The notes below the pieces were generated by a model, which saw only the letters and a program-made list of their open reading frames with translations, did not search any database and was not told where the DNA came from. Positions 47,123-60,642 of a DNA stretch of 64,000 nucleotides are shown here, piece by piece. Both the position numbers and the translations under genes were made by a program. Within the stretch, counting starts at the first letter, position 1. The number at the start of each line of letters is the position of its first letter. The DNA lies in IMG/VR virus record IMGVR_UViG_3300008110_010000, positions 155,356-219,355 of that record; one strand, 5' to 3'.

Positions 47123-47322
47123 CAAAAGAGGAATTAGAAAGGTATAATAGGAAGAAATTCTTATTGAAAGTTCCTGTTTCTTATATGGCTAGTGAGGATT
47201 TAGAACTCCCTCAACTGGAGTTTAACTTTACCCCAGAGGAAGTAAAGTTAAACAAGAAGATAGTTACTGAGGTAGTTGATATAAAAAAAGAAAAAAAGAA
47301 TAAAAGCAATAAGCTTCTATGA
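47101..47322 (+). CDS. Hypothetical protein (73 aa)
   Basis: Fills the operon gap and overlaps both neighbours. Confidence 0.45.
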   Translation: MGHDFDLTKEELERYNRKKFLLKVPVSYMASEDLELPQLEFNFTPEEVKLNKKIVTEVVDIKKEKKNKSNKLL

Positions 47323-47762: not shown

Positions 47763-47773
47763 GAAAATTTTAG

Positions 47774-49300
47774 ATGCTTAAATTTATAGTTTCAGAAGAT
47801 TTACAATGGTTACTTTTACAAGACTATGACGAGGAAGTTGAAAGAAAACAACTAGAGATTTCGTTGACTCGTAAAATACACAATCATTTTTTCCATCCTT
47901 TAGTGAAAAAGAAACATTGGGATGGAGCTATTTGTTTTGTGGATAAAAGAGGGCCACTCTGGAAAGTTCCTATTGGTCTATGGAGTGAGGTTTTTGATAT
48001 TGGCGAGAAGTATAAAATAGATGTTGATATCGTAGGTCTAGATCAAATCATAGAAAATGATCTTACATTAGAAGAATTTACCCAGTGGGCCAAAGAATTT
48101 TTTGCTGATAAAGAACTGAAGCCCAGAGATTACCAAATAGAGGCTGCGTGGAGAATTATAAAATTCAGATATTCCTGCCTAGAAATTGCGACTTCTTCGG
48201 GTAAGACCCTGATTGCATTTATCGTTCTGGCTTATCTTAAGATGGTTAAGCAAGTAAATAAATTCTTAATGATTGTTCCAAACACCACGCTGATTCTTCA
48301 AGGATCTGAGGATTTTGAAAGCTATGGATTAAAAGAACTTGATAATTGCGAAATGCAACTAATCCACGGGGGTAATAAAAACAAGATATCATCCGGGCTT
48401 ATGATAGGCACATATCAGTCATTGGTTAAGCAGGATGAATCTTTCTTTGACGGGGTTGAAGCTGTGTTTGTCGACGAATCACATCAAAGTCATTCTAAGT
48501 CGATTAAAGAAGTAGTTTCTAAATGTAAAGAATCTAAATATAGATTTGGTCTTTCGGGAACATTGACCAATAGAAACACTGCAGAGCATCTAACAATTCA
48601 GCAATATCTTGGACCATTGGTAATGGAGATCAGTCCTAAATTTTTGTTTGATAATAACTATGCTACTCCTGTTTCCATTAAGGTAGTTAAGATGAATTGG
48701 CTTTCCGACGATCTAAAGGAAAAGCTTTATGATCTAAGAACTAACAAGCAAGATTTAGAAGGCAGTGAAATCTTTAATGTGGAAAGAAAGTTAGTTATTT
48801 CATCGGATAAAAGAATCAATTATATAGTGGACTTCATTTCTAAAACTAGCAAAAATTCCCTGGTTTTATTCCAATCCGTTGGAGAGGGATATGGAAAAAG
48901 AATGTATGACATGCTTAGAGAAATTCAGGCAGATAAAGAGATCTTTTATGTCGACGGAGACACTGAACCTGAAAGAAGAGATTTTTATAAGGGTAAAATG
49001 GAAGAGGGTACTAATAAGGTTCTAGTGGCCAGTTTTGGAACCCTTAGTACCGGAGTCTCTGTGAAAAATATTCACAACATTTTCTTGACAGAATCTTACA
49101 AATCTGAGGTATTGATCAAACAAAGTCTTGGAAGGGGAATGAGACTTTACGAGGGAAAGGAGAAGGTTAATGTTATTGACTTTGTCGACGACTTTACCTG
49201 GAAAGCTTCTGCAAACTACCTAATAAAGCATTCTAATGAGCGTATAGAGATCTACAAGAGGGAAAAGTTCGAATATAAGGTTTATGAGGTTACTCTCTAA
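47774..49300 (+). CDS. uvsW: UvsW-like SF2 DNA helicase
   Basis: PRDYQ, ATSSGKT, VDESH, GLSGT, ASFGTLSTGVS and QSLGRGMR motifs. Confidence 0.92.
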   Translation: MLKFIVSEDLQWLLLQDYDEEVERKQLEISLTRKIHNHFFHPLVKKKHWDGAICFVDKRGPLWKVPIGLWSEVFDIGEKYKIDVDIVGLDQIIENDLTLEEFTQWAKEFFADKELKPRDYQIEAAWRIIKFRYSCLEIATSSGKTLIAFIVLAYLKMVKQVNKFLMIVPNTTLILQGSEDFESYGLKELDNCEMQLIHGGNKNKISSGLMIGTYQSLVKQDESFFDGVEAVFVDESHQSHSKSIKEVVSKCKESKYRFGLSGTLTNRNTAEHLTIQQYLGPLVMEISPKFLFDNNYATPVSIKVVKMNWLSDDLKEKLYDLRTNKQDLEGSEIFNVERKLVISSDKRINYIVDFISKTSKNSLVLFQSVGEGYGKRMYDMLREIQADKEIFYVDGDTEPERRDFYKGKMEEGTNKVLVASFGTLSTGVSVKNIHNIFLTESYKSEVLIKQSLGRGMRLYEGKEKVNVIDFVDDFTWKASANYLIKHSNERIEIYKREKFEYKVYEVTL

Positions 49301-49309: not shown

Positions 49310-49317
49310 GATATATA
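49310..49317 (+). promoter_or_regulatory. Late promoter GATATATA
   Basis: 12 nt before ATG 49330, followed by an A-rich leader. Confidence 0.6.
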
Positions 49318-49329
49318 AAATAAAAAAAA

Positions 49330-49941
49330 ATGAAATATATCCGTTCATATGCTTTATATGAGAGTAGTTTGAAGATATTTGAAAAGTACGATTCTTCAAA
49401 ATACACTAAATATACTGGCCAGTCCGCCGAGCCTGGATGGCAGGATTGGATTTACAATTTTTTCAAAAGCATGCAAAGCAGATTTGAGGGGTTTGATCGT
49501 TTTTACCAAAGAGAGATAGCAGTAAAGAAAACTGGAGGTGGTGTAATAGACACCGGCATGGGATGGCTAATTGGAAAAACTGGATCTCTTGCTACTGAGC
49601 TAATGGCTAAAATATTTGAGCCAAATAAATTTGCTACTCTGACCGGTCAGGGTTTGCTTGCTCCAAAATCTCCTGCTGATGTGTCTGGAATTAAATCCGC
49701 TAAAGACGTTACTCCTGAGCATCATAGATTGCTGAACGATCAGTTTGTTAAAAACGATCTTCCCACAATTTCTAATGATGACCAAATGAAAGATTATATC
49801 TTTAATTACTATAAGAAAATAGGGGTTCCTCCTAATTATAATAAAGTTGCTGATGAAGTAGCTGCAACGTATGCAACCACATACTTTAACAATAAAAAAT
49901 CGCAAGGTATGCTCGCCCAGGGTTTACCTTCTACATTTTAA
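49330..49941 (+). CDS. Hypothetical protein with capsid-targeting-like leader (MKYIRSYALYE)
   Basis: ORF with late promoter; leader pattern shared with its neighbours. Confidence 0.6.
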   Translation: MKYIRSYALYESSLKIFEKYDSSKYTKYTGQSAEPGWQDWIYNFFKSMQSRFEGFDRFYQREIAVKKTGGGVIDTGMGWLIGKTGSLATELMAKIFEPNKFATLTGQGLLAPKSPADVSGIKSAKDVTPEHHRLLNDQFVKNDLPTISNDDQMKDYIFNYYKKIGVPPNYNKVADEVAATYATTYFNNKKSQGMLAQGLPSTF

Positions 49942-49955
49942 TAGAAACAAAAAAA

Positions 49956-50222
49956 ATGAAAAAAATAACACAGATTCAAGAAAGCCTTAAGATAGAAAAA
50001 GCCAAGGTTATTTCCAAATTAGAGGAAACAAACAAATACCTAACTTTTGCAAAAGGCTATTACAAAAAGCATGGAGTATCTGGTCCTTTTGACGAGAAGT
50101 TTAAAAGTGACAAGAAAGCTCAAAAGAAATTTATGGATGACCTAGGTAAAGCTTGGGATGAGCACAAAGAAAAACATGGAATTGTAACCAGCTCAGAAAA
50201 GCCCTGGGGTAAGAAAAAATAA
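49956..50222 (+). CDS. Small basic hypothetical protein (leader MKKITQIQE)
   Basis: 88 aa, Lys-rich, in operon. Confidence 0.55.
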   Translation: MKKITQIQESLKIEKAKVISKLEETNKYLTFAKGYYKKHGVSGPFDEKFKSDKKAQKKFMDDLGKAWDEHKEKHGIVTSSEKPWGKKK

Positions 50223-50226
50223 CCTA

Positions 50227-50655
50227 ATGATCGTAGATATTCTTTACCCCATAATCGAGCATTACATTGGAGATGGAGTAGCGGGGGTTAAAAGAGGACA
50301 TGATGAAGTTTCCTTTTTAACTATAATGGGTAAGGATGGTAGAATTGAAAAGAATGAAGAAGGCGATTGGGATTTGTTAGTAGAGGAGGAAAAAGTTGCC
50401 GAGATAGAGGATTCTTTATTTTCTATTTTCTGTGAGGCAAAGAAACAACCCCCAATAGATGTCTATTATAAAAAACTATTAAAAGTAAAAAGAAAAAAAC
50501 TAAATTATAGATCTAGCATTTTGGTAGAACAACTCGTTAAATCTTTGGAAATGCTAATGCTTAACATGGAAGTTAAATTGAAGAATCCAATAGCAATAGG
50601 ACCATTTTTAGTTTTTACTTCTATGGGAAGAAAAGACATTATCGTATTAAATTAA
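50227..50655 (+). CDS. Hypothetical protein (142 aa)
   Basis: In operon with 3-4 nt gaps. Confidence 0.55.
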   Translation: MIVDILYPIIEHYIGDGVAGVKRGHDEVSFLTIMGKDGRIEKNEEGDWDLLVEEEKVAEIEDSLFSIFCEAKKQPPIDVYYKKLLKVKRKKLNYRSSILVEQLVKSLEMLMLNMEVKLKNPIAIGPFLVFTSMGRKDIIVLN

Positions 50656-50658
50656 TAT

Positions 50659-52662
50659 ATGGCAGGGATTAAACAACTAAGTGAAGTTTATAAAAAGCAA
50701 GGAGCAGAATTCATTGACAATTTATTTGGAGATGAAGTTACAGTTTCTGAAAAATTGAATGGTATGTCTTTCTCCTTCGAGAAAAGCATAGGAGACGGAA
50801 CTATGTTCTTTTATAAAAGAGATCAGGTTAATCCCATTTCTAAAATTGATAGAGTTCTGATGAACTATTATGATGGACCTATTACATACGTGCAGGGGTT
50901 ACCAGATCTTACGAAAAATGAAATTCCTCCTGGTTGGAGATTTGGAACTGAATTTTTTATTAACGAAAGTCCAGTTTTATTGTCATACAACAGAGTCCCT
51001 AAGAATGGACTTGTTCTAACCCATATCATTGTTAAAAATCAATATGGGGATATCGAGAGAACTATTGTTGAAAAGGAGGAATTAGATTATTGGGCAGATC
51101 TATTAGATATTGAAAGATCCCCAATTATTTTTCAGGGAAAATTATCAGACCAACAAAAAGCCTCAATTAATGATTTTGTTAATTCTCCGTTTGATAGCTT
51201 AAAATCGTCTCATGGAACACAGAGCTTTGCTAAGTACTTAGTGAAAACTTTAAATCCGGATTTAGATAAAACATTACTTAATGATGATTTAGATCGTCCC
51301 ATAGAGGGTATAGTTTTCAGATTTGGACCAATCAGCGGAACTGGTGAATCTTTTTCTGCAAAAATTATTGATCCAGTTTTTGAAGACATCACAAGACAAA
51401 ACAATGTTAAAAAAGCCAGTTATTTCCCAAGCGACATCTACGGAATAACACTCCTGGAAGTAATGAATTATATCCTAGATAAAGGTATAGAGAGTTTTGA
51501 ATTTGCCGGGGAAGATCCACAGGACAGATACATTTCTTTTATCTCTGGTGTTTTCAATTCCTTCATAGAAGATAATGGTGAAAAATACTTGGGTCTCGAT
51601 TTTCAAGAGCCCGAATTTTTAAAACAAGACGGATTTGAATCTAATTTAGATCTGATTAGTAACGATCAGACTAAACAATTAGTTGCTCAAGATGAAAGCT
51701 ATGAATCTCTTTTTAAATTGATCTTATCAGCATTTAGAAAGATTAAGAAAAAATCTGGTGGTTTTTTTACTCCTGGAGTTATAGAGCAATTTAATTTATT
51801 AGTTAGAGAGATATCAGATTATCTCAATAGAAAACCTGTAATTGCGGAATCATTGATTCCAACATTTAGTGAGTTTAGAAAGGTTAAAAAATCTTTTGTA
51901 CCCGATGAAGAACAGGATGATGAAGACGAGGAAGAACCTATGGAAGAACCCGAGGATGAAATTATAGGGGAGCCTATAGAAACCCCTCAAGAAAATCCTG
52001 AAGATGTTGAAGAAGAACCTGAAGAGGTTCAAGAAGAACCACAGAAAGATCCAGAAGAAATCCAGGTTAAAGAAATAGATCCTGAAATTGCCTTTAAAAT
52101 GCAAGCTGCTTTAGGACAGATGGATCCTATTTCAGATCCTGCTGTCAATCCTGAATCACAGAATGTAAATGTAATTATTGGTAAGTTTCAACCATTTAAT
52201 AACGGTCATCTTAAAATGATCAAAAAAGCAAATCAGGTAAATGGAAATCCTGTTGCCTTGATGGTGGTTAATAATTCCAAGAGCTTCATTAATAGGGAAA
52301 TAATGAATAAGATGATGAAGATCATTTCTGATGAAATGTCTGATCTAATTCATTCGGTAAATTACGTTCCTGATGATCTACTTTCTACTTCTATTGAAAA
52401 AATTAAAGATAAATGTAACCCTAAGAGCTTAACAGTGGGATCTAAAAAGCTAGACAATTATTTGATCCAGAGCCGCACTCTTAAGAAAAGAAAAAAATTA
52501 CCCCAGGATTTCCAAATCCAAACTTCTCCGGAGTGGGTTATTTCCAGAGAGGTAATGAAGACTCTAGAAGATAAAGATTACATGCAATTCAAAAAGCATG
52601 TCCCTAAATCTCTTTCTTCTCTTTGGGAGGAATTACATCGCTGCTACGAATCAGCTAAATAG
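50659..52662 (+). CDS. Fusion of an RNA-ligase-type (Rnl2-like) nucleotidyltransferase, an acidic linker and a cytidylyltransferase-like Rossmann domain
   Basis: EKLNG (motif I), FGTEF (III), IEGIVFR (IV), AKIIDPVF (V); C-terminal IGKFQPFNNGH (HxGH variant). Confidence 0.7.
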   Translation: MAGIKQLSEVYKKQGAEFIDNLFGDEVTVSEKLNGMSFSFEKSIGDGTMFFYKRDQVNPISKIDRVLMNYYDGPITYVQGLPDLTKNEIPPGWRFGTEFFINESPVLLSYNRVPKNGLVLTHIIVKNQYGDIERTIVEKEELDYWADLLDIERSPIIFQGKLSDQQKASINDFVNSPFDSLKSSHGTQSFAKYLVKTLNPDLDKTLLNDDLDRPIEGIVFRFGPISGTGESFSAKIIDPVFEDITRQNNVKKASYFPSDIYGITLLEVMNYILDKGIESFEFAGEDPQDRYISFISGVFNSFIEDNGEKYLGLDFQEPEFLKQDGFESNLDLISNDQTKQLVAQDESYESLFKLILSAFRKIKKKSGGFFTPGVIEQFNLLVREISDYLNRKPVIAESLIPTFSEFRKVKKSFVPDEEQDDEDEEEPMEEPEDEIIGEPIETPQENPEDVEEEPEEVQEEPQKDPEEIQVKEIDPEIAFKMQAALGQMDPISDPAVNPESQNVNVIIGKFQPFNNGHLKMIKKANQVNGNPVALMVVNNSKSFINREIMNKMMKIISDEMSDLIHSVNYVPDDLLSTSIEKIKDKCNPKSLTVGSKKLDNYLIQSRTLKKRKKLPQDFQIQTSPEWVISREVMKTLEDKDYMQFKKHVPKSLSSLWEELHRCYESAK

Positions 52663-52704
52663 ACTCATCGCATTATTTTTTTCCTACCGTTTGTTTTATA
52701 TTTG

Positions 52705-52712
52705 GATATATA
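52705..52712 (+). promoter_or_regulatory. Late promoter GATATATA, preceded by TATATTTG
   Basis: 12 nt before ATG 52725. Confidence 0.6.
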
Positions 52713-52724
52713 AAATAAAAATTA

Positions 52725-53570
52725 ATGGGAAAGCTCTCAAATTTTGAAAACAGTCAAAAATCTCCTCTTTTAGAAAACTCTGATAAAAGCAAAGCTGCTT
52801 TTGATAAAATAGTGGATTGTAAAATTAGACTTATTGCAGGATCTAATACTTTCTTTGGAAAGTTTTCTTTAAGCCTTGAATTTATTGAGGATCTTAATCT
52901 TCAATACAAAACTATGGCCACCGATGGTATGAAAATATACTATGACCCAGATTTTGTATTAAAACACAGCGAGGAAGAAATTAGATGGGTAATCTGTCAT
53001 GAAATCATGCATTGTGCTCTTTTTCATTTCATTAGAAGGCAAGCAAATCCCACAGCGTGGAACGCAGCTGCCGATTATGCCCTAAATCAATTAATAGACC
53101 CGGAATCTTACACAATTCCCCCAGGGGATCCACAGAGCCCTGAAGTAAGAAAAGCTAAAATATTTTTAGGTGCTTTGGGAAAAATGATACCAGGATGCTT
53201 AAATACTAGACCAGCTACCCCGGACAATCCTTACGGAAAACCAGAGTATAAGGGTTGGTCTGCAGAGCAAATTTATGACCATATAATAGAAAACAACGTT
53301 CAGCTTCCTCCAGAAGAAGGATGGAATTACGGAGGCGTTACACCCCCAGAATTTACTGGTTCTTCTAAGAAAAAATCTGCAGGGGCAACAGGTCCTTCTG
53401 GTCCTATCGCTAAAATTGGCGATTTCGTAAAAATAAAAAGCGGAGGGTTTGGTCGAATAACATCAATAGATGCAAATACTGGGGAAGCAATGGTTGACCC
53501 ATACTCTGAGGCTGATGCTATAGCACAGATAGAAAAACAATCCGGAAGAAAGGTTATATCAATAAAATAA
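52725..53570 (+). CDS. Zinc metallopeptidase domain protein (DUF2201 N-terminal-like) with a C-terminal KOW/SH3-like motif
   Basis: TMATDGMKIYYDPDFV, VICHEIMHCALFH and WNAAADYALN match this family; KIGDFVKIKSGGFGRITSID is KOW-like. Confidence 0.8.
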   Translation: MGKLSNFENSQKSPLLENSDKSKAAFDKIVDCKIRLIAGSNTFFGKFSLSLEFIEDLNLQYKTMATDGMKIYYDPDFVLKHSEEEIRWVICHEIMHCALFHFIRRQANPTAWNAAADYALNQLIDPESYTIPPGDPQSPEVRKAKIFLGALGKMIPGCLNTRPATPDNPYGKPEYKGWSAEQIYDHIIENNVQLPPEEGWNYGGVTPPEFTGSSKKKSAGATGPSGPIAKIGDFVKIKSGGFGRITSIDANTGEAMVDPYSEADAIAQIEKQSGRKVISIK

Positions 53571-53576
53571 ACTTCG

Positions 53577-54497
53577 ATGAAAATAGATATTAATGAATTA
53601 AGGAAGGTATCAGTAAAATTTGAACCGGAACCACCCCCACCACCACCTCCCCCTGGGACCCCACCGTCTCCTCCTCCCCCTAAGATTGAGGATTTTCCTG
53701 TTCCCCCTTCCCCTGATAAACCCTGGGACGACGAGGACGGAGGAGACGCCGGAGGAGCAGGAAACCAAGCTGGTGAAAAACCTAGGGTAATTGACGTTGA
53801 TCCGGAAAACATAGATGAATTAAAGGAAAAATGGAGAAGGGAGGTCGAAAAGGCAAGAAGATCTGGTGGACTTCCCCCAGAATTACAAAAATCTCTGGAC
53901 AAATTCAACGCAGGTAAAGTTGATTGGAAGGGTGATTTGAAGAGATTTGTTACCGGCCTTTCCGCTAAAAGAGAATATTTTTTACCTAACAAAAGGTTCC
54001 TAAGTAGAGGACAGGTTTTATGGGGTACCAAAAGAGTTAAAGAAGGTTTTGATGTTCTAACCCTGATCGTGGATACTTCAGGATCCATCTCCCAAAAAGA
54101 ATTGGAGGTATTTATTAACGAGGCTTATGCAATCGTAGAGGAATTTAATCCAAGAAAAACTTACGTTCTTTTCTTTGATACTAAGGTATATGAACCGGTG
54201 ACTGAAGTAGAAAGAGGTGAAAACATTAAGGTTAATAAAGCATACGGAGGAGGAGGAACTAGCTTTCTTGAACCTTTCCAATGGATAGAGAAGAATCTAT
54301 TAGGTCAGGTAAATATGGGCCCAGTTGTATTCTTTACTGACGGTTATCCAACATCAGGAGGATGGCCATCATCGAATGATTATGGAATCAGCACCTATGA
54401 TAAAAAAGTGATGTGGATTATAATACATCAGGATTACCCAAACAACGATCCTAATGTTGTAGTTCCGTTTGGAAATAGAACCGATCTAGTTTACTAA
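53577..54497 (+). CDS. vWA domain protein (DUF2201 C-terminal-like) with a Pro-rich N-terminal linker
   Basis: MIDAS motif IVDTSGSIS, GGGGTSF, VFFTDGY; VDWKGDLKRF; poly-Pro stretch. Confidence 0.85.
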   Translation: MKIDINELRKVSVKFEPEPPPPPPPPGTPPSPPPPKIEDFPVPPSPDKPWDDEDGGDAGGAGNQAGEKPRVIDVDPENIDELKEKWRREVEKARRSGGLPPELQKSLDKFNAGKVDWKGDLKRFVTGLSAKREYFLPNKRFLSRGQVLWGTKRVKEGFDVLTLIVDTSGSISQKELEVFINEAYAIVEEFNPRKTYVLFFDTKVYEPVTEVERGENIKVNKAYGGGGTSFLEPFQWIEKNLLGQVNMGPVVFFTDGYPTSGGWPSSNDYGISTYDKKVMWIIIHQDYPNNDPNVVVPFGNRTDLVY

Positions 54498-54500
54498 AAA

Positions 54501-54508
54501 GATATATA
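54501..54508 (+). promoter_or_regulatory. Late promoter GATATATA
   Basis: 24 nt before ATG 54533. Confidence 0.55.
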
Positions 54509-54532
54509 GAAAAAAGAATATAAGATTAATAA

Positions 54533-56161
54533 ATGCCAAGCATTAAAAAATTTGACCAATATGTAAACGAGGATTATTCATTAAAAAGTATGATATCTGG
54601 TGTTGGAAGCTGGATTAAAAATCTCGTAAGCAAGATTAAAGGTGGAGGAATAGAGAAAGTTCCCAACACGCCCGAAGCACACGTGAAAGCTGGAAAGCCC
54701 ATGGTAAATTATTATAGCTGTGCACGTGGCGGCGGTAAATCTGTGGAGCAACAAGTTGAAGACACTTATGGTATTAAGTTTGAATCTAAAGCATTCGAAG
54801 ACTATGAGATTGATGAGGCAACTATGAAGGATTACGGAGATATTGAAATGTTAAAATATCCTGATAAAGAAGCTGGAATTTCAAACATGAAAGGAGATGC
54901 TCTGAAGAGCATGATACTTAAAAGATTTGATAGTTTAGTTAGAGGCGGCTACGATAAGCCAATCTTTATTTATGGAGCTCCTGGTATAGGTAAAACCGAG
55001 ATAGTTGCTAGCGTAGCTTCCCAACTTTGTATAGATCTTATAACGGTTGATCTTCAGTTCATGGATCCTACTGACTTCTTGGGTATTCCATCAACTGATG
55101 ATATCCCGAAAGAATTTTTCACTGAAAAAGATATAGAAAAAAGAATTGGAATTCTAAGTAAGCTCGGAAAGGGAATAACTAGATCTAACCCTCCATCTTG
55201 GCTTCCATTAGACAATGGCGAACCAATCACAGTGGTTGGTGGAGACGGCAATGAGGAAAAATCCGACGGACCTGGTGGAATTATTTTCTTTGACGAAATG
55301 AACAGGGCAAACCCTCCAGTTATTGCTGCAATGATGGTACTTCTTCAACAGAGAAGAGTTGGTACCGAGTATAATCTTCCTAGTAAATGGTTGATTGTAG
55401 CAGCGGGAAATAGAAAGGAAGACGATTTACCTGGTGAGATCAATGATTTAGGTTCAGCTCTTATTAACCGTTGTGAGGTAGTAAACTACCTTGCTAGTCC
55501 TAAAGAATGGATCGAATGGGTTAAAACCTCTCCAATAAAATTGAAGGGTGCATTTGGAAGAACTGCCAATGAAATTGTACTTCCTGAATTGATAGCATTT
55601 ATGGAATTTTCTAAAGATTATTTCTACACTTTAAATGCAGGAAAAAAAGGAAGAGTATTTGCATCCCCAAGATCTTGGATCGATGCTTCTAAGGCTCTTT
55701 ACTCAGAAATGGATTACCTCAGAAGACAAGGAACCAATTCAATTTCTAAAGAAGAGATGATTGATATTTTTTCTAGAAACGTGGGTCCAGAACCTGCACA
55801 GGCATTCGTTGAATTTTATACAGAATCACAGAATACCAAAATGGAAGATGTTGTTAAGGTTTTTGACGATCCTGATAACGCTCCTCTTCCAGAAAAAATT
55901 GGTGGACAATACAAGCCAGATAAATCTTACTATTTAATAGCTGCTATAGTTGATAAATCTAGACAAATCAGTCCTGATGGGAAACTTACTGCAAGCCAAT
56001 TCTCTAATGCGATAGATTGGTCTATTAGATTAGATTCTGCTGAATATGGAACTGCTTTTGTAAGCTTATTACTTTCTAAGCACCCTTACATAACAAAATC
56101 TGGTATCGAATACATTAAACACATGGAAAGATACACTGACAGATACATGCCAGACAAATAA
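54533..56161 (+). CDS. MoxR/AAA_5-type AAA+ ATPase with a long N-terminal extension
   Basis: Walker A IYGAPGIGKT, Walker B IIFFDEMNRA, VAAGNR, ALINR and ASPRSW motifs. Confidence 0.9.
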   Translation: MPSIKKFDQYVNEDYSLKSMISGVGSWIKNLVSKIKGGGIEKVPNTPEAHVKAGKPMVNYYSCARGGGKSVEQQVEDTYGIKFESKAFEDYEIDEATMKDYGDIEMLKYPDKEAGISNMKGDALKSMILKRFDSLVRGGYDKPIFIYGAPGIGKTEIVASVASQLCIDLITVDLQFMDPTDFLGIPSTDDIPKEFFTEKDIEKRIGILSKLGKGITRSNPPSWLPLDNGEPITVVGGDGNEEKSDGPGGIIFFDEMNRANPPVIAAMMVLLQQRRVGTEYNLPSKWLIVAAGNRKEDDLPGEINDLGSALINRCEVVNYLASPKEWIEWVKTSPIKLKGAFGRTANEIVLPELIAFMEFSKDYFYTLNAGKKGRVFASPRSWIDASKALYSEMDYLRRQGTNSISKEEMIDIFSRNVGPEPAQAFVEFYTESQNTKMEDVVKVFDDPDNAPLPEKIGGQYKPDKSYYLIAAIVDKSRQISPDGKLTASQFSNAIDWSIRLDSAEYGTAFVSLLLSKHPYITKSGIEYIKHMERYTDRYMPDK

Positions 56162-56177
56162 TAAAATTAAAACAATT

Positions 56178-56203
56178 AAACCCCCGGCTTTCGGGGGTTT
56201 TTT
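56178..56203 (+). terminator. Rho-independent terminator
   Basis: AAACCCCCG-gcttt-CGGGGGTTT stem followed by a T tract, after the AAA gene. Confidence 0.9.
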
Positions 56204-56226
56204 GTTTCCTTTCGGGTTTAAATTTG

Positions 56227-56234
56227 AATATATA
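56227..56234 (+). promoter_or_regulatory. Late promoter AATATATA, preceded by TAAATTTG
   Basis: 13 nt before ATG 56248. Confidence 0.55.
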
Positions 56235-56247
56235 AAATAAAAAAAGA

Positions 56248-56814
56248 ATGAAATTCATAAACAAATTTGGAGATCACTTTCCCAAGCCTGTAAATAATTT
56301 AAATAAAGTAAATGAAGATGCTGGTTATGGAAACGACTATTTTGCAGACGAAAAGGTTGAAAAATCTCAGCACTACTTCTTTAAAATTAGTGAGGGAGAC
56401 GAAGAGATTGGATTAATCTTAAAAATTGGAAAATTTTCTAAGTCTGGAGTTATCTCCGAGAATGAAAAAAATTACGGCGTGCTTCATTTAGAGATTATGA
56501 ATCCCGATGATATGGATGATTATTTAGTAAATGATAGTGAATACAGATCTAGGGAAGATGAAGGATTCTCCCTTTCAAACGAGGTATTAAGTCAGGCATT
56601 TTTTATTATTACCAAATCAATGGATAATTATTTACAAAAAAATCCGAAGGTTACTAAGTTTTATGATGAGATTCTAGAAAATCTTGGCATGGATAGAGAA
56701 GAATATTCAGATTTCATTTCCCCGAGAATCAGAACGTGGTCCAGGGGAAGATGGAAGATTCAGGAAGGAAATTCAGAGAAATCATTAATTTACACTAAGA
56801 CCTCACATGAGTAA
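56248..56814 (+). CDS. Acidic hypothetical protein (leader ending VNE-D)
   Basis: 188 aa with a late promoter. Confidence 0.6.
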   Translation: MKFINKFGDHFPKPVNNLNKVNEDAGYGNDYFADEKVEKSQHYFFKISEGDEEIGLILKIGKFSKSGVISENEKNYGVLHLEIMNPDDMDDYLVNDSEYRSREDEGFSLSNEVLSQAFFIITKSMDNYLQKNPKVTKFYDEILENLGMDREEYSDFISPRIRTWSRGRWKIQEGNSEKSLIYTKTSHE

Positions 56815-57124
56815 TCTTAAAAAATATAGCGAATTCATTAATGAATCATTAACACCGGTAATGTTTATGAGTGTTAAAAATGAATTGAAGAATTCGATTG
56901 TTAAATTCCTACACGAAAAAGGACAGGCAACTAGAAAGGAAATTTTAGAATTTGCCTCCACCCTAGGAGAGAATGGATCTGTTGTGGACAGAAGATGGAT
57001 CTCCAGAAATAAACAATTGATTAAGTGTTTGGTTTCAGAGGAAGGACCAAATCTTTATACCCTTACAAAATTGGGAAAAAGATTTGCCAAAAGTCTTTCG
57101 GTAAATGAAACAAAAAACCTTTAA
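56807..57124 (+). CDS. Small protein with capsid-targeting-like leader and a possible winged-helix fold
   Basis: Leader MSNLKKYSEFINE; IVKFLHEKGQATRKEIL...YTLTKLGKRF resembles a winged helix-turn-helix. Confidence 0.6.
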   Translation: MSNLKKYSEFINESLTPVMFMSVKNELKNSIVKFLHEKGQATRKEILEFASTLGENGSVVDRRWISRNKQLIKCLVSEEGPNLYTLTKLGKRFAKSLSVNETKNL

Positions 57125-57137
57125 TTTTGTATAAATA
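57107..57137 (+). promoter_or_regulatory. Composite promoter: GAAAC-N18-TATAAA, TAATTTTG and exact TATAAATA
   Basis: All three motifs overlap 12-43 nt before ATG 57150. Confidence 0.55.
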
Positions 57138-57149
57138 ATAAACATTTTT

Positions 57150-57335
57150 ATGGAAAACTACGAAAAATTAGTTGCTCTTGTAGAATCAATGAGAGAAAAT
57201 GTGGATAAGTTTTTTGATAAGGGTAATAAGTCTGCTGGAACCAGAGTTAGAACTCAGTGTCAAGAATTAAAAAAATTAGCACAAGAACTTCGCTTAGATG
57301 TTCAAAATGCTAAAAAATCCACTACAGAGCAATAA
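57150..57335 (+). CDS. Histone H1-like Hc1 family small DNA-binding protein
   Basis: KGNKSAGTRVR...ELKKLAQELR matches the Bacteroidota Hc1-like motif KGNKAAGTRAR. Confidence 0.8.
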   Translation: MENYEKLVALVESMRENVDKFFDKGNKSAGTRVRTQCQELKKLAQELRLDVQNAKKSTTEQ

Positions 57336-57361
57336 TAATATCGAAAAGATATTTAGTTACT

Positions 57362-57388
57362 AAAACCAGCCAATGCGCTGGTTTTTTT
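57362..57388 (+). terminator. Rho-independent terminator
   Basis: AAAACCAGC-caatgc-GCTGGTTTT plus a T tract. Confidence 0.85.
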
Positions 57389-57396
57389 GTTTTCAA

Positions 57397-57404
57397 AATA
57401 TATA
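57397..57404 (+). promoter_or_regulatory. Late promoter AATATATA
   Basis: 17 nt before ATG 57422. Confidence 0.5.
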
Positions 57405-57421
57405 GAAGTAAATTTTATCTC

Positions 57422-58435
57422 ATGTCTACATCAAGACCATTTGCATATAATACGGGATCCGCTATAGCAGGTACCGATCAGGTAGGAAATCTAGCAATCG
57501 GATTTCCCACCTCCGGATTTGGATCTACCGGACTAGAATGGTGGAACGGACCTGACGAAGACCTTGGATATGTCATCGCCTGTCAGGTTCCTGATGAAAG
57601 TCAGCCTACCCCAGAAATGGGAAATTTAGCTTCTGTTGGCTTTTATAGAACCGGTCTTTTCACTGATGAATCTTTTATAGATCTGGCAGAATATATTGCT
57701 AGAGTGGTTTCAAACAATCCCCAAAATTTTGCAAACGGATCCGATGCTAAAACTTGGCTCAATAATAATGGGTATTGGACATCTTACACTTCACCATTGG
57801 TAACTTCTGGTTTGGTTCTTAGATTAAATGCATCTGATCCTGCCTCCTATTCAGGATCTGGGTCTACCTGGGTGGATCTGGCGGGAACCCAACAAAATGT
57901 AACATTATATAATTCCCCTTCATACACATCAGGACCTCCCTCATATTTTACTTTTAATGGATCTAGTCAATATGGACTGGGGTCTGGATCTGTTCTTCCT
58001 ACGACATCTTATACTAAATCCGTTTGGTTTTACCTAAATGGATATGCTGACAATAACATAGTTAGCGGAGATGGACATTTCATGTATATGGGGCCAGCGG
58101 GATCAACTCAGAAGATATATTGCGGACATTCAAATTGGGGAAATTATGTGGCATTTCCTTCCTCTGCAACTATAAATCTAAACACCTGGTATTATGCTGC
58201 TTTAACTTTCAACACTTCCGATGGCATGAAGCTTTATATTAATGGTGTATTGGACAGCACATACACCGCTAACAAAGGTGCACACCCAGGAACTGGTACG
58301 ATAAATCTGGCTACATTTAACGGAGGCAATCTAATGAATGGTAGAATTTCTAAAGTTTATTGCTATAATACCAGTTTAACCGGGCCTGAGGTTCTTCAAA
58401 ACTTTAATGCGGATAAATCAGAATTTGGCCTTTAG
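57422..58435 (+). CDS. LamG / concanavalin A-like lectin domain virion protein
   Basis: GLVLRLNASDPASYSGSGSTWVDL, YTKSVWF, WYYAALTF, MKLYINGV and GRISKVYCYNTSL motifs. Confidence 0.85.
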   Translation: MSTSRPFAYNTGSAIAGTDQVGNLAIGFPTSGFGSTGLEWWNGPDEDLGYVIACQVPDESQPTPEMGNLASVGFYRTGLFTDESFIDLAEYIARVVSNNPQNFANGSDAKTWLNNNGYWTSYTSPLVTSGLVLRLNASDPASYSGSGSTWVDLAGTQQNVTLYNSPSYTSGPPSYFTFNGSSQYGLGSGSVLPTTSYTKSVWFYLNGYADNNIVSGDGHFMYMGPAGSTQKIYCGHSNWGNYVAFPSSATINLNTWYYAALTFNTSDGMKLYINGVLDSTYTANKGAHPGTGTINLATFNGGNLMNGRISKVYCYNTSLTGPEVLQNFNADKSEFGL

Positions 58436-58478
58436 TATCAATTTTTCCGAAACAACCAGTGATCTTATTGCTTTAATC

Positions 58479-58486
58479 GATATATA
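58479..58486 (+). promoter_or_regulatory. Late promoter GATATATA
   Basis: 12 nt before ATG 58499; a GAAAC lies upstream at 58449. Confidence 0.55.
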
Positions 58487-58498
58487 AAACAACAAATT

Positions 58499-58717
58499 AT
58501 GGCTTATTATCAATGTAAAGTGACTTTTGACACAGGTGAGGTCAACAAGCAAGGAAAACCACAAATCACCAAAACAGTGATGCTGGTAGAGGCAACGGGG
58601 GTAACCGAAGCAGAAGCTAGAATCACGGAACACCTTAAATCCGATATTATGGATTTTGAAGTGACCTCGGTTGCTCTTTCCAATATCGAATCGGTGTTGC
58701 AAGAAAAAGACAAGTAA
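58499..58717 (+). CDS. DUF4494-like small protein
   Basis: YYQCKV...LVEATGVTEAEARI...DFEVTSV resembles Bacteroidota DUF4494. Confidence 0.65.
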   Translation: MAYYQCKVTFDTGEVNKQGKPQITKTVMLVEATGVTEAEARITEHLKSDIMDFEVTSVALSNIESVLQEKDK

Positions 58718-58719
58718 CA

Positions 58720-58920
58720 ATGAAAAACCAAAAATCTCCTGTAGACGAAAACAAAAAAGACGGTGGAGCAGCGGACACTTCCAATTATGAACCACCAATC
58801 AGTCCTGTTAAAATTCCAGATAATGATACTGGATTCAAAACAGTAAAAAAAGCCTACAGGAGATTTATTTGGACCTTAGATCAACATTCTGAGAAAAAGA
58901 TAAGAGGAAAGGATAAATAG
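58720..58920 (+). CDS. Hypothetical protein (66 aa)
   Basis: In operon; leader ends VDE-N. Confidence 0.5.
   Translation: MKNQKSPVDENKKDGGAADTSNYEPPISPVKIPDNDTGFKTVKKAYRRFIWTLDQHSEKKIRGKDK
58912..58919 (+). promoter_or_regulatory. Late promoter GATAAATA
   Basis: 13 nt before ATG 58933. Confidence 0.45.
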
Positions 58921-58932
58921 TAATAAAAAACT

Positions 58933-59289
58933 ATGCCTTCCCTTTCAAGAACACAACAAAGGCTTTTCGGTCAAGCATACGGGGTAAAGCTCTGGAAAAA
59001 GTCAGGGGGTAAAAGAGGTATTAATCCTAAAGACCTCAATCCTAAGTACAAAAAAGAAATTGAAAAATTAGCAGACAGTATGTCTATGGCTAAACTTAAA
59101 GATTTCGCGGAAACCAAACACAAAAGAATTCCCGAAGAAGTAAATGAGAAAGTGATCAAAGCATTATTTTTTAAACTTGATCCGGACTCTCAATACGATT
59201 CGTCTAAAGAGAAAGCAAGAAGGCTTGCTAATCTATCAGATTATAGAGAATTTTTACATAAGAAAAAAAGAGATAAAAATGCAAACTAA
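58933..59289 (+). CDS. DUF3008-like protein
   Basis: MPSLSRTQQRLFGQA...SMSMAKLKDFAETKHKRIPE pattern. Confidence 0.65.
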   Translation: MPSLSRTQQRLFGQAYGVKLWKKSGGKRGINPKDLNPKYKKEIEKLADSMSMAKLKDFAETKHKRIPEEVNEKVIKALFFKLDPDSQYDSSKEKARRLANLSDYREFLHKKKRDKNAN

Positions 59290-59746
59290 TCCTGTTAATG
59301 AAGGCTGTGGATGTGGCAAAAAAGCACAGTCTGAAACCGTTATTCAAAAAACCATCCAACAAGATCCTAATCTAGGAAAAATGGCGGATGTCTTAGATGG
59401 CAGAAGGGGTACTATTAACGATTCTATTAGAAACTCTAGAGGTGAGGTTATTGGATATGTTCTTAATAATGACAATGGTACTTTCAGAGTGTTTAAAGAT
59501 AAAGTCTCCAACATTTATGAAAGTGAAGGATCAATGGCAACCCTGCCTAATGTTTCCGGTATGGGTGAAGTACAAGCACCAACTAGAGACTCAGCAGGAT
59601 CTGGAGATCAGTTTCCAAGTTTAACTGCTGGAACCCCAGCTGCTAAAAAATCAAAGGGAAAGAAAGCAAAAGACGAGCCATCCCTTGCTAGTTCTGTTAT
59701 GGACTGGAAAAATTTTAGAAAAGCAATGCTTAAAAATCAGGGGTGA
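59279..59746 (+). CDS. Hypothetical protein (start revised to ATG 59279)
   Basis: MQTNPVNE leader, an SH3-like segment and a TLPNVSGMGEV...GSGDQF motif. Confidence 0.55.
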   Translation: MQTNPVNEGCGCGKKAQSETVIQKTIQQDPNLGKMADVLDGRRGTINDSIRNSRGEVIGYVLNNDNGTFRVFKDKVSNIYESEGSMATLPNVSGMGEVQAPTRDSAGSGDQFPSLTAGTPAAKKSKGKKAKDEPSLASSVMDWKNFRKAMLKNQG

Positions 59747-59873: not shown

Positions 59874-60233
59874 ATGTTAAAACTTTATTCGTCGCCTGCT
59901 TCAAGACTTTTAGATCTGTACAACGACATGGATGTTTTTCTAGGGAATCCAATTCCTTTGGAAAATGGAACACTAACACTCGATGTTCCTGGATTCTCCA
60001 AAAAAGACCTAATTGTTGAGATTGATCAGAATGAAAATCTTTTAACCATCAAAGGGGAAAAGGAAATTAACGGTAAATCCAGAAAGATCAGCAAGAGCAT
60101 CAGAGATTACAGACTGAGGAACATAGATCTTAAAAAGGTAGAAGCTAAAGTTGAGGACGGCGTTCTCTATATCGATTTTAAAGATGTCGAGGACAAGCTA
60201 AAAGAAACTAAAAGAGTCATTTCTTTAAATTAA
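59874..60233 (+). CDS. Small heat shock protein (HSP20 / alpha-crystallin)
   Basis: LDVPGFSKKDLIVEI...LTIKGEK...VEAKVEDGVLYIDF. Confidence 0.9.
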   Translation: MLKLYSSPASRLLDLYNDMDVFLGNPIPLENGTLTLDVPGFSKKDLIVEIDQNENLLTIKGEKEINGKSRKISKSIRDYRLRNIDLKKVEAKVEDGVLYIDFKDVEDKLKETKRVISLN

Positions 60234-60255
60234 TTTAGTTTCTTAAATTTGGTGT

Positions 60256-60642
60256 GTGGAAAAAATAGATTTGATTCAGACTCATTATTTAGGAGACCCA
60301 TGGAAGATAATGATCTCATGCATTCTCCTTAATCAAACTACTAACGTGCAAGTTAGACCGGTTGTCCGCCAGCTCTTTGAACGTTTTCCCACACCAGATT
60401 CTTTTAATTTGAATCACCATTTAGAAATAGCTAACATTCTTAAGCCCTGTGGATTTCAAAACATCAAAGCAAAGAGGATTATAGATTTCACAAGGGTTTG
60501 GAACTCTGGGGAAAGAGACCCAAATAAATTTCCTGGTATTGGTCCTTATGCTAGAGACGCATGGAAGATTTTTGTGGAAGGTAAGAAGGATTTTATTGCC
60601 TGTGATAAAAAGCTGAATCTATATCTTCAGCAATGTAACTAA
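60256..60642 (+). CDS. HhH-GPD DNA glycosylase, MBD4-like
   Basis: DPWKIMISCILLNQT, LKPCG, PGIGPYARDAWKIF and DKKLNLY parallel MBD4 DPWKLLIATIFLN, HGIGKYGNDSYRIF and DHKLNKY. GTG start. Confidence 0.85.
   Translation: MEKIDLIQTHYLGDPWKIMISCILLNQTTNVQVRPVVRQLFERFPTPDSFNLNHHLEIANILKPCGFQNIKAKRIIDFTRVWNSGERDPNKFPGIGPYARDAWKIFVEGKKDFIACDKKLNLYLQQCN

What the first reader, a model, noticed from the sequence alone, without database searches (positions are those of the whole stretch)
49330..59746. Island of late genes with T4 capsid-targeting-like leaders: candidate virion-packaged, injected cargo set
Seen: many ORFs here open with a basic/aromatic leader ending in (I/V/L/Y)-x-E. These are 56807 MSNLKKYSEFINE-S, 54533 MPSIKKFDQYVNE-D, 49330 MKYIRSYALYE-S, 49956 MKKITQIQE-S, 56248 MKFINKF...KVNE-D, 52725 MGKLSNFE...PLLE-N, 59279 MQTNPVNE-G, 58720 ...PVDE-N and 53577 MKIDINE-L. 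Most of these operons sit behind the late-promoter motif, and the core structural and replication genes lack such leaders. Known: T4 internal proteins IPII/IPIII carry MKTYQEFIAE, which targets them to the prohead and is cut after Glu by gp21; KKYSEFINE matches it at 6 of 9 positions. Inference: this 10 kb block encodes proteins packaged in the head and delivered at infection. Unusually, these include enzymes (AAA ATPase, metallopeptidase, ligase/nucleotidyltransferase) as well as small basic proteins.
Basis: partly seen in the sequence, partly recalled or inferred. Interest (0 to 1): 0.88.

Follow-up and report, generated by a model that had tools for sequence, protein, structure and literature searches.

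The report
Capsid-targeting leader tags on phage proteins
Five or six genes in this stretch of an uncultured giant phage begin with a short tag like the one phage T4 uses to load proteins into its head for injection; the tag copies a repeat in this phage's own head scaffold and is common in uncultured phages, so it may predict what such phages inject.

Summary
Of the nine ORFs listed, two carry a canonical leader (56807 MSNLKKYSEFINE|S; 54533 MPSIKKFDQYVNE|D). Three carry conserved variants (56248, 52725, 49330), one is possible (49956) and three fail (53577, 58720, 59279). The RNA ligase start is part of the ligase fold.

The T4-type reading is well supported in silico:
- About 20-29 kb upstream of the window, the same phage encodes a T4 gp21-family protease (Peptidase_S77) and a gp23-type capsid protein.
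- The protease is fused to a scaffold with 15 tandem 14-residue repeats, NLDKNISYSEYLAE. The repeat core equals the leader core and the T4 IPII/IPIII core YQEFIAE.
- A head-module protein starts MKKYSEFISE|S.
- A back-translated leader pattern hit the 120-locus limit in IMG/VR. 94 of 125 matches are true ORF starts, on at least 70 unrelated protein families.
- In 596 Gb of cellular genomes only 8 of 120 matches look like ORF starts.

Leader genes are not confined to this block, so it is not a unique island. Packaging, cleavage and injection remain untested. I file it as a new variant of a known kind, the T4 capsid targeting sequence. It extends to Bacteroidota-type jumbo and megaphages and to enzymes (MoxR ATPase, DUF2201 metallopeptidase).

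The parts
49311..49326 (+). late-promoter-like motif ATATATAAAATAAAAA, 18 nt upstream of ATG 49330
49330..49941 (+). 203-aa protein of unknown family with a variant leader, MKYIRSYALYE|S (leader 49330-49362). The predicted mature part has pI 9.0.
   Evidence: Leader M[KR][HY][IL]x[SP][FY]x[LI][LFY]E[SA] is conserved in 4 relatives, with synonymous codon changes. No Pfam or PHROG hit.
49956..50222 (+). 88-aa very basic protein (27% K+R) starting MKKITQIQE|S. A possible short leader with aliphatic instead of aromatic residues at positions 4 and 7.
   Evidence: It lacks the aromatic pair, so it is graded as possible only.
50659..52662 (+). RNA-ligase-like plus cytidylyltransferase-like protein. 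It is NOT a leader protein.
   Evidence: Weak Pfam RNA_ligase match over residues 25-235, below the curated cut-off. Residues 5-33 align with T4 Rnl2 residues 3-37, including EKxxG (E = 0.037).
52706..52721 (+). late-promoter-like motif, exact copy, 19 nt upstream of ATG 52725
52725..53570 (+). DUF2201_N putative zinc metallopeptidase with a variant leader, MGKLSNFENSQKSPLLE|N (52725-52775)
   Evidence: The Pfam domain starts at residue 40. Relatives start MSKLVKWKDYSKIYE|D. DUF2201 proteins of independent phages start with the canonical leader (L098/L125, L004). The L016 orthologue lacks it.
53577..54497 (+). DUF2201 VWA-like protein with a poly-proline N-terminal stretch and no leader. It is a separate gene from 52725.
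   Evidence: Pfam. The N-terminus is not conserved as a leader. In relatives the two ORFs lie in different frames. A TAA stop sits at 53568-53570. The two pieces were searched apart.
54533..56161 (+). MoxR-type AAA_5 ATPase. It has a canonical leader MPSIKKFDQYVNE|D (54533-54571) and an add-on N-terminal extension of about 110 aa (to about 54862).
   Evidence: Pfam and PHROG domains start at about residue 142. Leader and extension are conserved in 3 relatives and absent from the L016 orthologue. Distant relatives match only from residue 143.
56178..56205 (+). G+C-rich hairpin followed by a T run: a terminator-like site closing the 52725-56161 unit
   Evidence: read directly from the sequence printed
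56228..56243 (+). late-promoter-like motif, exact copy, 20 nt upstream of ATG 56248
56248..56814 (+). 188-aa acidic protein with a leader of variable length that ends VNE|DAGYG (56248-56316)
   Evidence: Orthologues start MKFIKDFKAYKINE|EAGYG. Distant family members in L051, L072 and L103 also end [VMI]NE| just before the conserved DGFG.
56807..57124 (+). 105-aa basic (pI 9.9) winged-helix protein with the canonical leader MSNLKKYSEFINE|S (56807-56845). Its start overlaps the end of 56248 by 8 nt.
   Evidence: 37 close homologues, with M1, F10 and E13 invariant. AF2 model pLDDT 78.8; the leader is a low-confidence separate helix and residues 26-103 form a winged HTH. Foldseek hits to MarR/HxlR/ArsR regulators, E = 2e-3, probability 1.0. 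Rank 3 of 28,396 positions with the scaffold-repeat PSSM.
57150..57335 (+). 61-aa Hc1 histone H1-like DNA-binding protein in the same late unit. No separable leader.
   Evidence: Pfam Hc1, E = 1.6e-23, covering residues 1-57
57422..58435 (+). Laminin_G_3 (concanavalin-like) protein with no leader. It resembles the C-terminal parts of virion structural proteins.
58480..58495 (+). late-promoter-like motif, 2 mismatches, upstream of 58499
58499..59746 (+). four small ORFs (DUF4494-like 58499, 58720, 58933, 59279) without a supported leader

Best explanation
The conserved N-terminal peptides are T4-type capsid targeting sequences: removable address tags.

Each tag has two halves.
- A targeting half: an amphipathic stretch with hydrophobic or aromatic residues at i and i+3.
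- A processing half: aliphatic-x-Glu.

The tag imitates one unit of the 14-residue repeat (NLDKNISYSEYLAE) that makes up the scaffold part of this phage's protease-scaffold fusion protein.

Inferred mechanism. During late infection the tagged proteins co-assemble with the scaffold core through tag-repeat contacts. The gp23-type shell closes around them. The gp21-family serine protease cuts after the Glu in scaffold repeats, in the capsid-protein propeptide and in the tags alike. The scaffold peptides leave, and the freed mature proteins stay in the head and leave with the DNA at the next infection.

Predicted cargo in the window:
- a basic winged-helix DNA-binding protein (56807);
- an acidic protein (56248);
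- a 203-aa protein (49330);
- a MoxR AAA ATPase (54533);
- a DUF2201_N metallopeptidase (52725);
- possibly a small basic protein (49956).

Shown: the motif, its conservation, its portability, its restriction to viral DNA, its identity with the scaffold-repeat core and the T4 CTS core, and the presence of the T4-type protease and capsid protein in the same genome.

Inferred: binding to the scaffold, cleavage after Glu, retention in the head and ejection.
For: 1. T4 IPII and IPIII start MKTYQEFIAE. T4 mutagenesis places targeting at CTS residues 4 and 7 and processing at residues 8 and 10 (PMC9026906). These map onto the four most conserved leader positions here, 7, 10, 11 and 13.

2. The same genome encodes a Peptidase_S77 / phrog_207 head maturation protease (E = 1.7e-32) and a Pfam Gp23 capsid protein.

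3. The protease carries 15 tandem 14-aa repeats with the core YSEYLAE. A PSSM built only from the repeats ranks the N-termini of p282 (MKKYSEFISE|S, head module) and of 56807 second and third among 28,396 positions in the 81 other proteins. The chance of two N-terminal hits in the top three is about 0.0015.

4. The capsid-protein N-terminus has four [ILV]xE sites in 44 residues, including SLNE|SAG. T4 gp23's own maturation site, FGSFLTE65, fits the same core pattern. The protease-scaffold protein has the highest density of hydrophobic-x-E-[SGAN] in the 92-kb composite (3.9 against 0.79 per 100 aa).

5. Portability. The IMG/VR scan hit its 120-locus limit. 94 of 125 matches are ORF starts. The unconstrained position 11 is I, L or V in 110 of 125. 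The 96 unique proteins fall into 70 families.

6. Control in 596 Gb of cellular genomes: 8 of 120 matches are start-like and 23 of 120 have I, L or V at position 11 (Fisher p about 2e-30).

7. Leader-bearing loci L062, L124, L115, L108 and L026 carry T4 gp2, gp4, gp20 and gp21 homologues within a few kb. Their protease-scaffold fusions carry the same repeats. So does the 735-kb phage LR756501.1.

8. Synonymous codon changes occur inside conserved leaders.

9. Modularity. The L016 phage lacks the leader on both the ATPase and the metallopeptidase. Independent phages have it on DUF2201 proteins.

10. Leader genes share the [GA]ATATATA element with head and tail genes.
Against: - There is no protein-level evidence for any relative: no virion proteome and no N-terminal mapping.
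- Three of the five window leaders depart from the canonical spacing.
- The window copy of 56248 has lost the second aromatic position.
- The P2 residue of the leaders (mostly N) differs from that of the repeats in this phage (A). The match is therefore to a motif class, not to an exact copy.
- The ATPase carries about 100 further residues after the putative cut, and their role is unknown.
- The top PSSM hit is an internal site in the tail sheath (aa 724), so the motif alone is not sufficient.
- The cultured relatives examined have different or no such repeats in the parts read (PTm1, MaF61).
- The AF2 model of the repeat region is helical but has very low confidence (pLDDT about 30).
- The 'late promoter' is a sequence motif only; no transcription data exist.
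Confidence: 0.7

Rival explanations
1. The tags do send proteins to the scaffold core. But the tagged proteins are assembly factors or core components that act inside the prohead and are then degraded or expelled. They are not cargo delivered to the next host. For example, MoxR, VWA and the metallopeptidase might help core assembly or clearance.
For: [quoted passage not shown] Leader genes p282 and L265:6657 lie inside the head module. MoxR/VWA pairs are generally assembly chaperones; this rests on established knowledge of the family and was not tested here.
Against: In T4, proteins with this kind of tag (IPs, Alt) are retained and injected (PMC9026906; PMC12373910). The leader families include CHAP, GDSL lipase and HD enzymes and a DNA-binding winged-helix protein, which suit action in the host. 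Apart from the protease-scaffold, no leader protein shows the very high cleavage-site density expected of a protein that is degraded.
Confidence: 0.17
2. The N-terminal similarity is chance plus composition. AT-rich codons after the start codon favour K, N, I, F and Y, and [ILVY]-x-E is a loose motif.
For: About 22% of N-termini are expected to carry [ILVY]xE in 15 residues, and window ORFs outside the island match that rate (8 of 34).
Against: This cannot explain several results: 94 of 125 viral matches being ORF starts against 8 of 120 in cellular genomes of similar composition; the I/L/V bias at an unconstrained position; conservation through synonymous changes; and identity with the scaffold-repeat core.
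Confidence: 0.03
3. The leader is a translation or mRNA-level element, for example an unstructured A/U-rich start region that boosts late-gene expression in a host without Shine-Dalgarno pairing.
For: No Shine-Dalgarno sequences are visible. Leaders are AT-rich and sit 14-32 nt from a promoter-like element.
Against: Third-codon positions vary freely while the residues are kept. The conserved features are an aromatic pair and a Glu. Highly expressed late genes (capsid protein, sheath, tube) lack the leader.
Confidence: 0.03
4. The tag is a docking or oligomerisation peptide for some other phage structure or for a MoxR-VWA complex, unrelated to the head.
For: Both the MoxR ATPase and its DUF2201 partner carry the tag, and they lose it together in L016.
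Against: Most of the 70 leader families have no link to MoxR. The tag matches the scaffold repeats and the capsid-protein processing site. It also co-occurs with T4-type head genes.
Confidence: 0.05

Closest known systems
Capsid targeting sequence (CTS) of phage T4 internal proteins IPI, IPII and IPIII and of Alt (Mullaney and Black 1996; reviewed in PMC9026906, PMC3012670)
   Same: An N-terminal tag of 10-19 residues on otherwise unrelated proteins. It has an aromatic pair at i and i+3 followed by aliphatic-x-Glu. It occurs with a gp21-family protease and a gp23-type capsid. The core Y-x-E-F-I-x-E is shared, and one head-module protein here starts MKKYSEFISE, 7 of 10 identical to MKTYQEFIAE.
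   Different: - The usual form here has three extra residues, M-x-x-[IL]-K-[KN], and Asn at P2.
- Spacing between the two halves varies.
- It sits on large enzymes (a 542-aa MoxR ATPase, a metallopeptidase) as well as on small proteins.
- The host clade is Bacteroidota-type jumbo and megaphages that have no detectable sequence similarity to T4 in most genes (phmmer with T4 proteins found nothing in the window).
- No experimental proof exists.
Polymorphic internal-protein loci of T-even phages found through their shared signal sequence (Repoila et al. 1994, cited in PMC12373910). Ip1-3 are injected inhibitors of GmrSD restriction enzymes.
   Same: Runs of unrelated small genes that share only the leader, for example the three leader genes in a row in L035 and L142. 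The leader can be used as a search handle.
   Different: The targets and functions of the proteins here are unknown. One leader protein (L142:4516) is 53% Asp+Glu, which suggests a DNA mimic, but this was not tested.
Long N-terminal propeptides of head and ejection proteins in phiKZ, 201phi2-1 and SPN3US, cut by a gp21-related protease (PMC5694885, PMC10052503)
   Same: Giant phages load many proteins, enzymes included, into the head and trim them after Glu. Paralogues can share identical N-termini.
   Different: Those propeptides are mostly longer than 100 residues, with an A/S/G-x-E motif and no common short tag. Here a short tag of about 13 residues with aliphatic-x-E is shared. The roughly 110-aa extension of the ATPase may be an intermediate case.
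T4 scaffold core protein gp22, which is cleaved at many L/I-x-E sites
   Same: A helical, Glu-rich scaffold cut into small peptides. T4 gp22 has 16 [LI]xE sites in 269 aa.
   Different: Here the scaffold is fused to the protease. It is built of 15 near-identical 14-residue repeats, each ending in a cleavage site and each resembling the cargo tag. No T4 head protein read here shows the core motif in tandem.
Cargo-loading peptides of encapsulins (analogy only, from general knowledge)
   Same: A short terminal peptide is enough to direct unrelated enzymes into a protein shell.
   Different: Encapsulin peptides are C-terminal, bind the shell protein itself and are not removed.

Membership tests
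T4-type capsid targeting sequence / internal-protein system | Tag at the extreme N-terminus, about 10-20 residues, directly after the initiator Met | tested here: met
   Window N-termini. 94 of 125 IMG/VR matches have a stop within 15 codons upstream and no upstream Met.
T4-type capsid targeting sequence / internal-protein system | Targeting determinants: hydrophobic or aromatic residues at i and i+3 (T4 residues 4 and 7) | tested here: met
   [FY]7 and F/Y10 in 56807 and 54533, and in the orthologues of 56248 and 52725. F10 is invariant in the 56807 family. The T4 determinants are taken from PMC9026906. 49956 has Ile/Ile. The window copies of 52725 and 56248 lack the second aromatic residue.
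T4-type capsid targeting sequence / internal-protein system | Processing determinants: aliphatic at P3 and Glu at P1 (T4 residues 8 and 10) | tested here: met
   [IVL]11 in 110 of 125 matches although the search left it unconstrained. E13 is invariant in the 56807 family.
T4-type capsid targeting sequence / internal-protein system | A gp21-family (Peptidase_S77) prohead protease in the same genome | tested here: met
   L143:1749-3830: Pfam PF03420 on record and phrog_207 with E = 1.7e-32. The sequence search against solved structures found no match.
T4-type capsid targeting sequence / internal-protein system | A gp23-family capsid protein with an N-terminal propeptide bearing the same kind of site | tested here: inconclusive
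   Pfam Gp23 on L143:3845-5584. Four [ILV]xE sites lie in the first 44 residues, including SLNE|SAG. The real cleavage site is unknown.
T4-type capsid targeting sequence / internal-protein system | The same tag on proteins with unrelated mature parts | tested here: met
   70 families among 96 unique leader proteins. Pfam hits on their representatives include DUF2201_N, CHAP, GDSL lipase, HD and LRR.
T4-type capsid targeting sequence / internal-protein system | Physical incorporation into proheads, removal of the tag by the protease, and ejection into the host | not testable with these tools
   Needs virion proteomics or N-terminomics and reporter fusions.
T4-type capsid targeting sequence / internal-protein system | Late expression together with head genes | tested here: inconclusive
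   A shared [GA]ATATATA element lies 14-32 nt upstream of head, tail and leader genes and is absent before replication genes. No transcript data exist.
MoxR AAA+ / VWA / DUF2201 metallopeptidase module | An AAA_5 ATPase next to a VWA-like DUF2201 domain and a DUF2201_N zincin-like domain | tested here: met
   Pfam: AAA_5 4.1e-8, DUF2201 5.2e-13, DUF2201_N 2.5e-22. The DUF2201_N and VWA parts are two genes here and in the relatives but are fused in L004. Catalytic residues were not examined.
phiKZ-type long propeptides | Propeptide longer than 100 residues ending in an A/S/G-x-E site | tested here: not met
   Leaders are 10-23 residues with an aliphatic P3. Only the ATPase has a long extension, and its end shows no conserved site.

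The most novel reading that the evidence does not exclude
The cargo tag is a single copy of the scaffold's own 14-residue repeat. If so, capsid loading in this clade works by 'scaffold mimicry'. The clade runs from phages of about 150 kb to the 540-735-kb megaphages. Any protein that acquires one repeat unit would be co-assembled, trimmed and injected. The tag would then be a readable address label. It would allow the injected proteome of thousands of uncultured phages to be predicted from sequence. That proteome would include a complete MoxR ATPase plus metallopeptidase machine delivered ready-made into the host.
Probability: 0.35. Interest if true: 0.85.

Novelty: new variant of a known kind. 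Interest (0 to 1): 0.72.

Why it matters
What giant and mega-sized phages carry in their heads besides DNA is largely unknown, because almost none of them is cultured. A short, recognisable tag tied to the head protease and scaffold would give a sequence-only way to list candidate injected proteins in such phages. These are likely first-strike counter-defence or takeover factors. The link between tag and scaffold repeat also suggests a concrete, testable mechanism for how T4-type targeting sequences are recognised. The literature read here does not explain that mechanism. The tag could also serve as a loading signal for engineering non-model phages of Bacteroidota.

Tried and rejected
- Megablast of the block against 50,697 phage records found nothing.
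- The window's first ORF could not be used for a contig look-up because it is truncated. Walking upstream from 1216-1803 worked instead.
- tblastn of a 600-aa leader protein (L062) against cultured phages gave only an unrelated C-terminal domain match.
- The protease found no relative among solved structures by sequence.
- Literature searches for a prior description of this leader or of protease-scaffold tandem repeats found none in the held library. That is not proof of absence.
- The cultured relatives were read only around their head genes. PTm1 has different scaffold repeats (DFTKELSE|G). MaF61 has another architecture, with many xNE[SN] sites. No genome-wide leader census was made for either.
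- Strict co-variation between the leader P2 residue and the scaffold-repeat P2 residue was looked for and not found.
- The AF2 model of the protease-scaffold protein is too poor (pLDDT 46) to support more than helical propensity.
- I rejected the idea that 52725 and 53577 are one gene broken by a stop or read through it. In relatives they lie in different frames.


Full report
WHAT THE WINDOW IS. The window is the last 64 kb of a 219,355-bp IMG/VR contig, IMGVR_UViG_3300008110_010000. It belongs to an AT-rich (about 35% GC) contractile-tailed phage with almost all genes on one strand. Positions 1-44,350 encode baseplate, fibre, sheath and tube proteins. Positions 44,343-49,300 encode a RuvC-like resolvase, a gp32-type SSB, a primase, a UvsY-like protein and a helicase. 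The DNA polymerase starts at 61,114. The finding therefore lies between replication genes. By capsid protein the closest records are the following:
- an uncultured 462-kb phage, 45% identity;
- the Prevotella Lak megaphages, 39-40%;
- Tenacibaculum phages PTm1, PTm5 and pT24, Sphingomonas phage PAU and Flavobacterium phage MaF61, 30-32%.
This is a Bacteroidota-type jumbo/megaphage lineage.

CHECKING THE OBSERVATION. The ORFs and N-termini are as described. [ILVY]-x-E within the first 15 residues occurs in 10 of 15 island ORFs and 8 of 34 other ORFs (Fisher p = 0.009). The outside rate equals the expectation of about 22% from a per-position background of 0.0185. That motif is too loose to carry the claim alone, so I used four syntenic relatives (L003, L013, L015, L016).
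- Two leaders are canonical and conserved: 56807 (MSNLKKYSEFINE|S) and 54533 (MPSIKKFDQYVNE|D).
- Three are conserved variants with an aromatic pair followed, after 0-3 extra residues, by aliphatic-x-Glu: 56248 (orthologues MKFIKDFKAYKINE|EAGYG), 52725 (orthologues MSKLVKWKDYSKIYE|D) and 49330 (M[KR]HLxS[FY]ELLE|SS).
- 49956 is possible.
- 53577, 58720 and 59279 are not supported.
- The ligase start aligns with the N-terminus of T4 Rnl2 up to the catalytic EKxxG motif, so it belongs to the enzyme fold.
Synonymous codon differences inside the conserved leaders show selection on the peptide, not on the RNA.

THE PROMOTER CLAIM. The exact 16-mer ATATATAAAATAAAAA occurs three times in the window. 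Each copy lies 18-19 nt upstream of an island start codon, and a near copy precedes 58499. I joined the window to 28 kb of upstream sequence to make a 92-kb composite. In it, the core [GA]ATATATA lies 14-32 nt upstream of the protease-scaffold gene, two further head-module genes, the sheath, the fibres and the leader genes. It is absent before the SSB, primase, helicase and polymerase genes. Calling it a late-type promoter is reasonable but remains an inference.

THE HEAD MODULE OF THE SAME PHAGE. I walked upstream through a 122,861-bp JGI contig of the same phage. This reached the following genes, in order:
- an 851-aa protein;
- a 693-aa protein with Pfam Peptidase_S77 (the T4 gp21 family) and phrog_207 'head maturation protease' (E = 1.7e-32);
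- a 579-aa Pfam Gp23 capsid protein;
- three unknown proteins of 372, 282 and 756 aa.
The 282-aa protein starts MKKYSEFISE|S. That is the same length as the T4 IPII/IPIII leader MKTYQEFIAE|A, read from the T4 record, and 7 of 10 residues are identical. A 247-aa protein just upstream of the 851-aa gene starts (M)FRIQNFKDWSLNE|D behind the same promoter core. A cluster 13-15 kb upstream of the window holds three more leader genes: MKVLRYSEFSLNE|S, MEKKILSFEEFSKRYAE|G and MSLRHIKSFSSLFE|S. The second of these is 53% Asp+Glu. The block is therefore one of several leader-gene clusters, not a unique island.

THE KEY NEW RESULT. Residues 275-484 of the protease protein consist of 15 tandem 14-residue repeats with the consensus NLDKNISYSEYLAE. 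The repeat core Y-S-E-Y-L-A-E has the same four positions as the T4 leader and as the leaders here: aromatic, aromatic at +3, aliphatic at +4, Glu at +6. In T4 these are the positions that mutagenesis ties to targeting (residues 4 and 7) and to processing (residues 8 and 10) (PMC9026906). I built a scoring matrix from the repeats alone and scanned 28,396 positions in the 81 other proteins. The N-termini of p282 and of 56807 ranked second and third. Rank 1 is an internal site of the sheath. The chance of two N-terminal hits in the top three is about 0.0015. The capsid-protein N-terminus has four [ILV]xE sites in 44 residues, the last being SLNE|SAG. T4 gp23's known maturation site FGSFLTE65 fits the same pattern. 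The protease-scaffold protein has the highest density of hydrophobic-x-E-[SGAN] in the composite.

HOW WIDESPREAD THE TAG IS. I scanned IMG/VR with a back-translated pattern, ATG-x-x-[not V]-K-[KN]-[FY]-x-x-[FY]-x-N-E.
- The scan stopped at its 120-locus limit.
- 94 of 125 matches are ORF starts.
- Position 11, left free in the pattern, is I, L or V in 110 of 125.
- The consensus is MKN[IL]K[KN][FY][ED][ED]F[IVL]NE[SGNA].
- The 96 unique proteins fall into 70 families by their mature parts.
- Pfam finds DUF2201_N, CHAP, GDSL lipase, HD and LRR domains among 38 representatives.
- Contigs range from 4 to 675 kb.
- Five leader loci also carry T4 gp2, gp4, portal and protease homologues. Their protease-scaffold fusions hold the same repeats; L108 has ten copies of NLDKNISYSEYLAE.
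- The 735-kb phage LR756501.1 has a portal gene, an 807-aa protease-scaffold gene with 13 YxEYIAE repeats, and a capsid gene, in that order.
As a control I ran the same pattern on 596 Gb of bacterial and archaeal genomes. The first 120 matches behave like chance: 8 are start-like and 23 have I, L or V at position 11 (Fisher p about 2e-30).

THE ENZYMES.
- The MoxR-type ATPase has the leader plus an extension of about 110 residues ahead of its AAA_5 domain. Both are missing from the L016 orthologue.
- The DUF2201_N metallopeptidase has its leader ahead of the Pfam domain. The L016 orthologue again lacks it.
- In unrelated phages, DUF2201 proteins start with canonical leaders: MSKIKNYINFANE|Y in L098/L125 and MKYIKSYENFIFE|N in the 429-kb contig of L004.
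- The VWA partner (53577) has no leader. It is a separate gene, lying in a different frame in the relatives.
- 56807 is predicted to be a basic winged-helix DNA-binding protein (AF2 pLDDT 78.8; Foldseek hits to MarR/HxlR-type regulators).
- It is followed by an Hc1 histone-like protein.

INTERPRETATION AND LIMITS. The most economical reading is a T4-type capsid targeting system in which the tag mimics a scaffold repeat. All steps after translation are inferred: scaffold binding, cleavage after Glu, retention and ejection. The main rival keeps the targeting but has the proteins act within, or be cleared from, the prohead. I found no prior description of this leader consensus or of the repeat-tag relation in the held literature. 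The use of the T4 leader to find internal-protein genes in T-even phages is old (Repoila 1994, cited in PMC12373910). I therefore file this as a new variant of a known kind.

Noticed in passing
L143:2571-3200 (protease-scaffold protein aa 275-484), about 25 kb upstream of window position 1: Fifteen tandem 14-residue repeats (NLDKNISYSEYLAE) sit in the C-terminal half of the prohead protease. The same array occurs in L108, L062 and L124 and in the 735-kb phage LR756501.1 (L144).
   Followed up: yes
L142:4516-5034: A leader-bearing 172-aa protein whose predicted mature part is 53% Asp+Glu (pI 4.1). It may be a DNA mimic or a core-like acidic protein.
   Followed up: no
window 53568-53579: The DUF2201_N and VWA ORFs are in the same frame, separated by TAA plus two codons. 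In relatives they lie in different frames, so they are two genes and not a broken or read-through gene.
   Followed up: yes
window 53640-53720: A poly-proline tract (eight consecutive Pro, then a further P-rich stretch) lies at the N-terminus of the VWA-like protein. It is conserved as a P-rich stretch in three of four relatives.
   Followed up: partly
window 57150-57335: A 61-aa Hc1 histone H1-like protein (Pfam E = 1.6e-23) lies in the same late unit as the leader-bearing winged-helix protein. It may be a DNA-condensing protein packaged with the genome.
   Followed up: partly
window 43635-43658 (sheath aa 724-731): The best match anywhere to the scaffold-repeat matrix is an internal QYSSYLGE near the C-terminus of the tail sheath. 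It may be coincidence or a processing site; this is unknown.
   Followed up: no
window 63287-64000: Gly-rich, collagen-like coding repeats lie at the contig end. The contigs of all four relatives end at the same place, so the repeats break the assemblies and the genome is probably longer than 219 kb.
   Followed up: partly
L142 and L017, 1-20 kb upstream of the window: A large sugar and cell-surface biosynthesis cluster (epimerases, glycosyl-, pyruvyl-, methyl- and acetyltransferases, asparagine synthase, ATP-grasp) sits between the head and tail modules.
   Followed up: no
window 59874-60642: An HSP20 small heat-shock protein and an HhH-GPD base-excision glycosylase lie just downstream of the block.
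   Followed up: partly
L035 (294-kb contig), L076, L103: Arrays of two or three consecutive unrelated genes that share only the canonical leader. They resemble the polymorphic internal-protein loci of T-even phages.
   Followed up: partly
L266:7228-8922 (Tenacibaculum phage PTm1 ORF300): This cultured relative has a protease-scaffold fusion with a different repeat (…WIKxDFTKELSE|G…). It offers a natural test of whether leaders co-vary with scaffold repeats.
   Followed up: no
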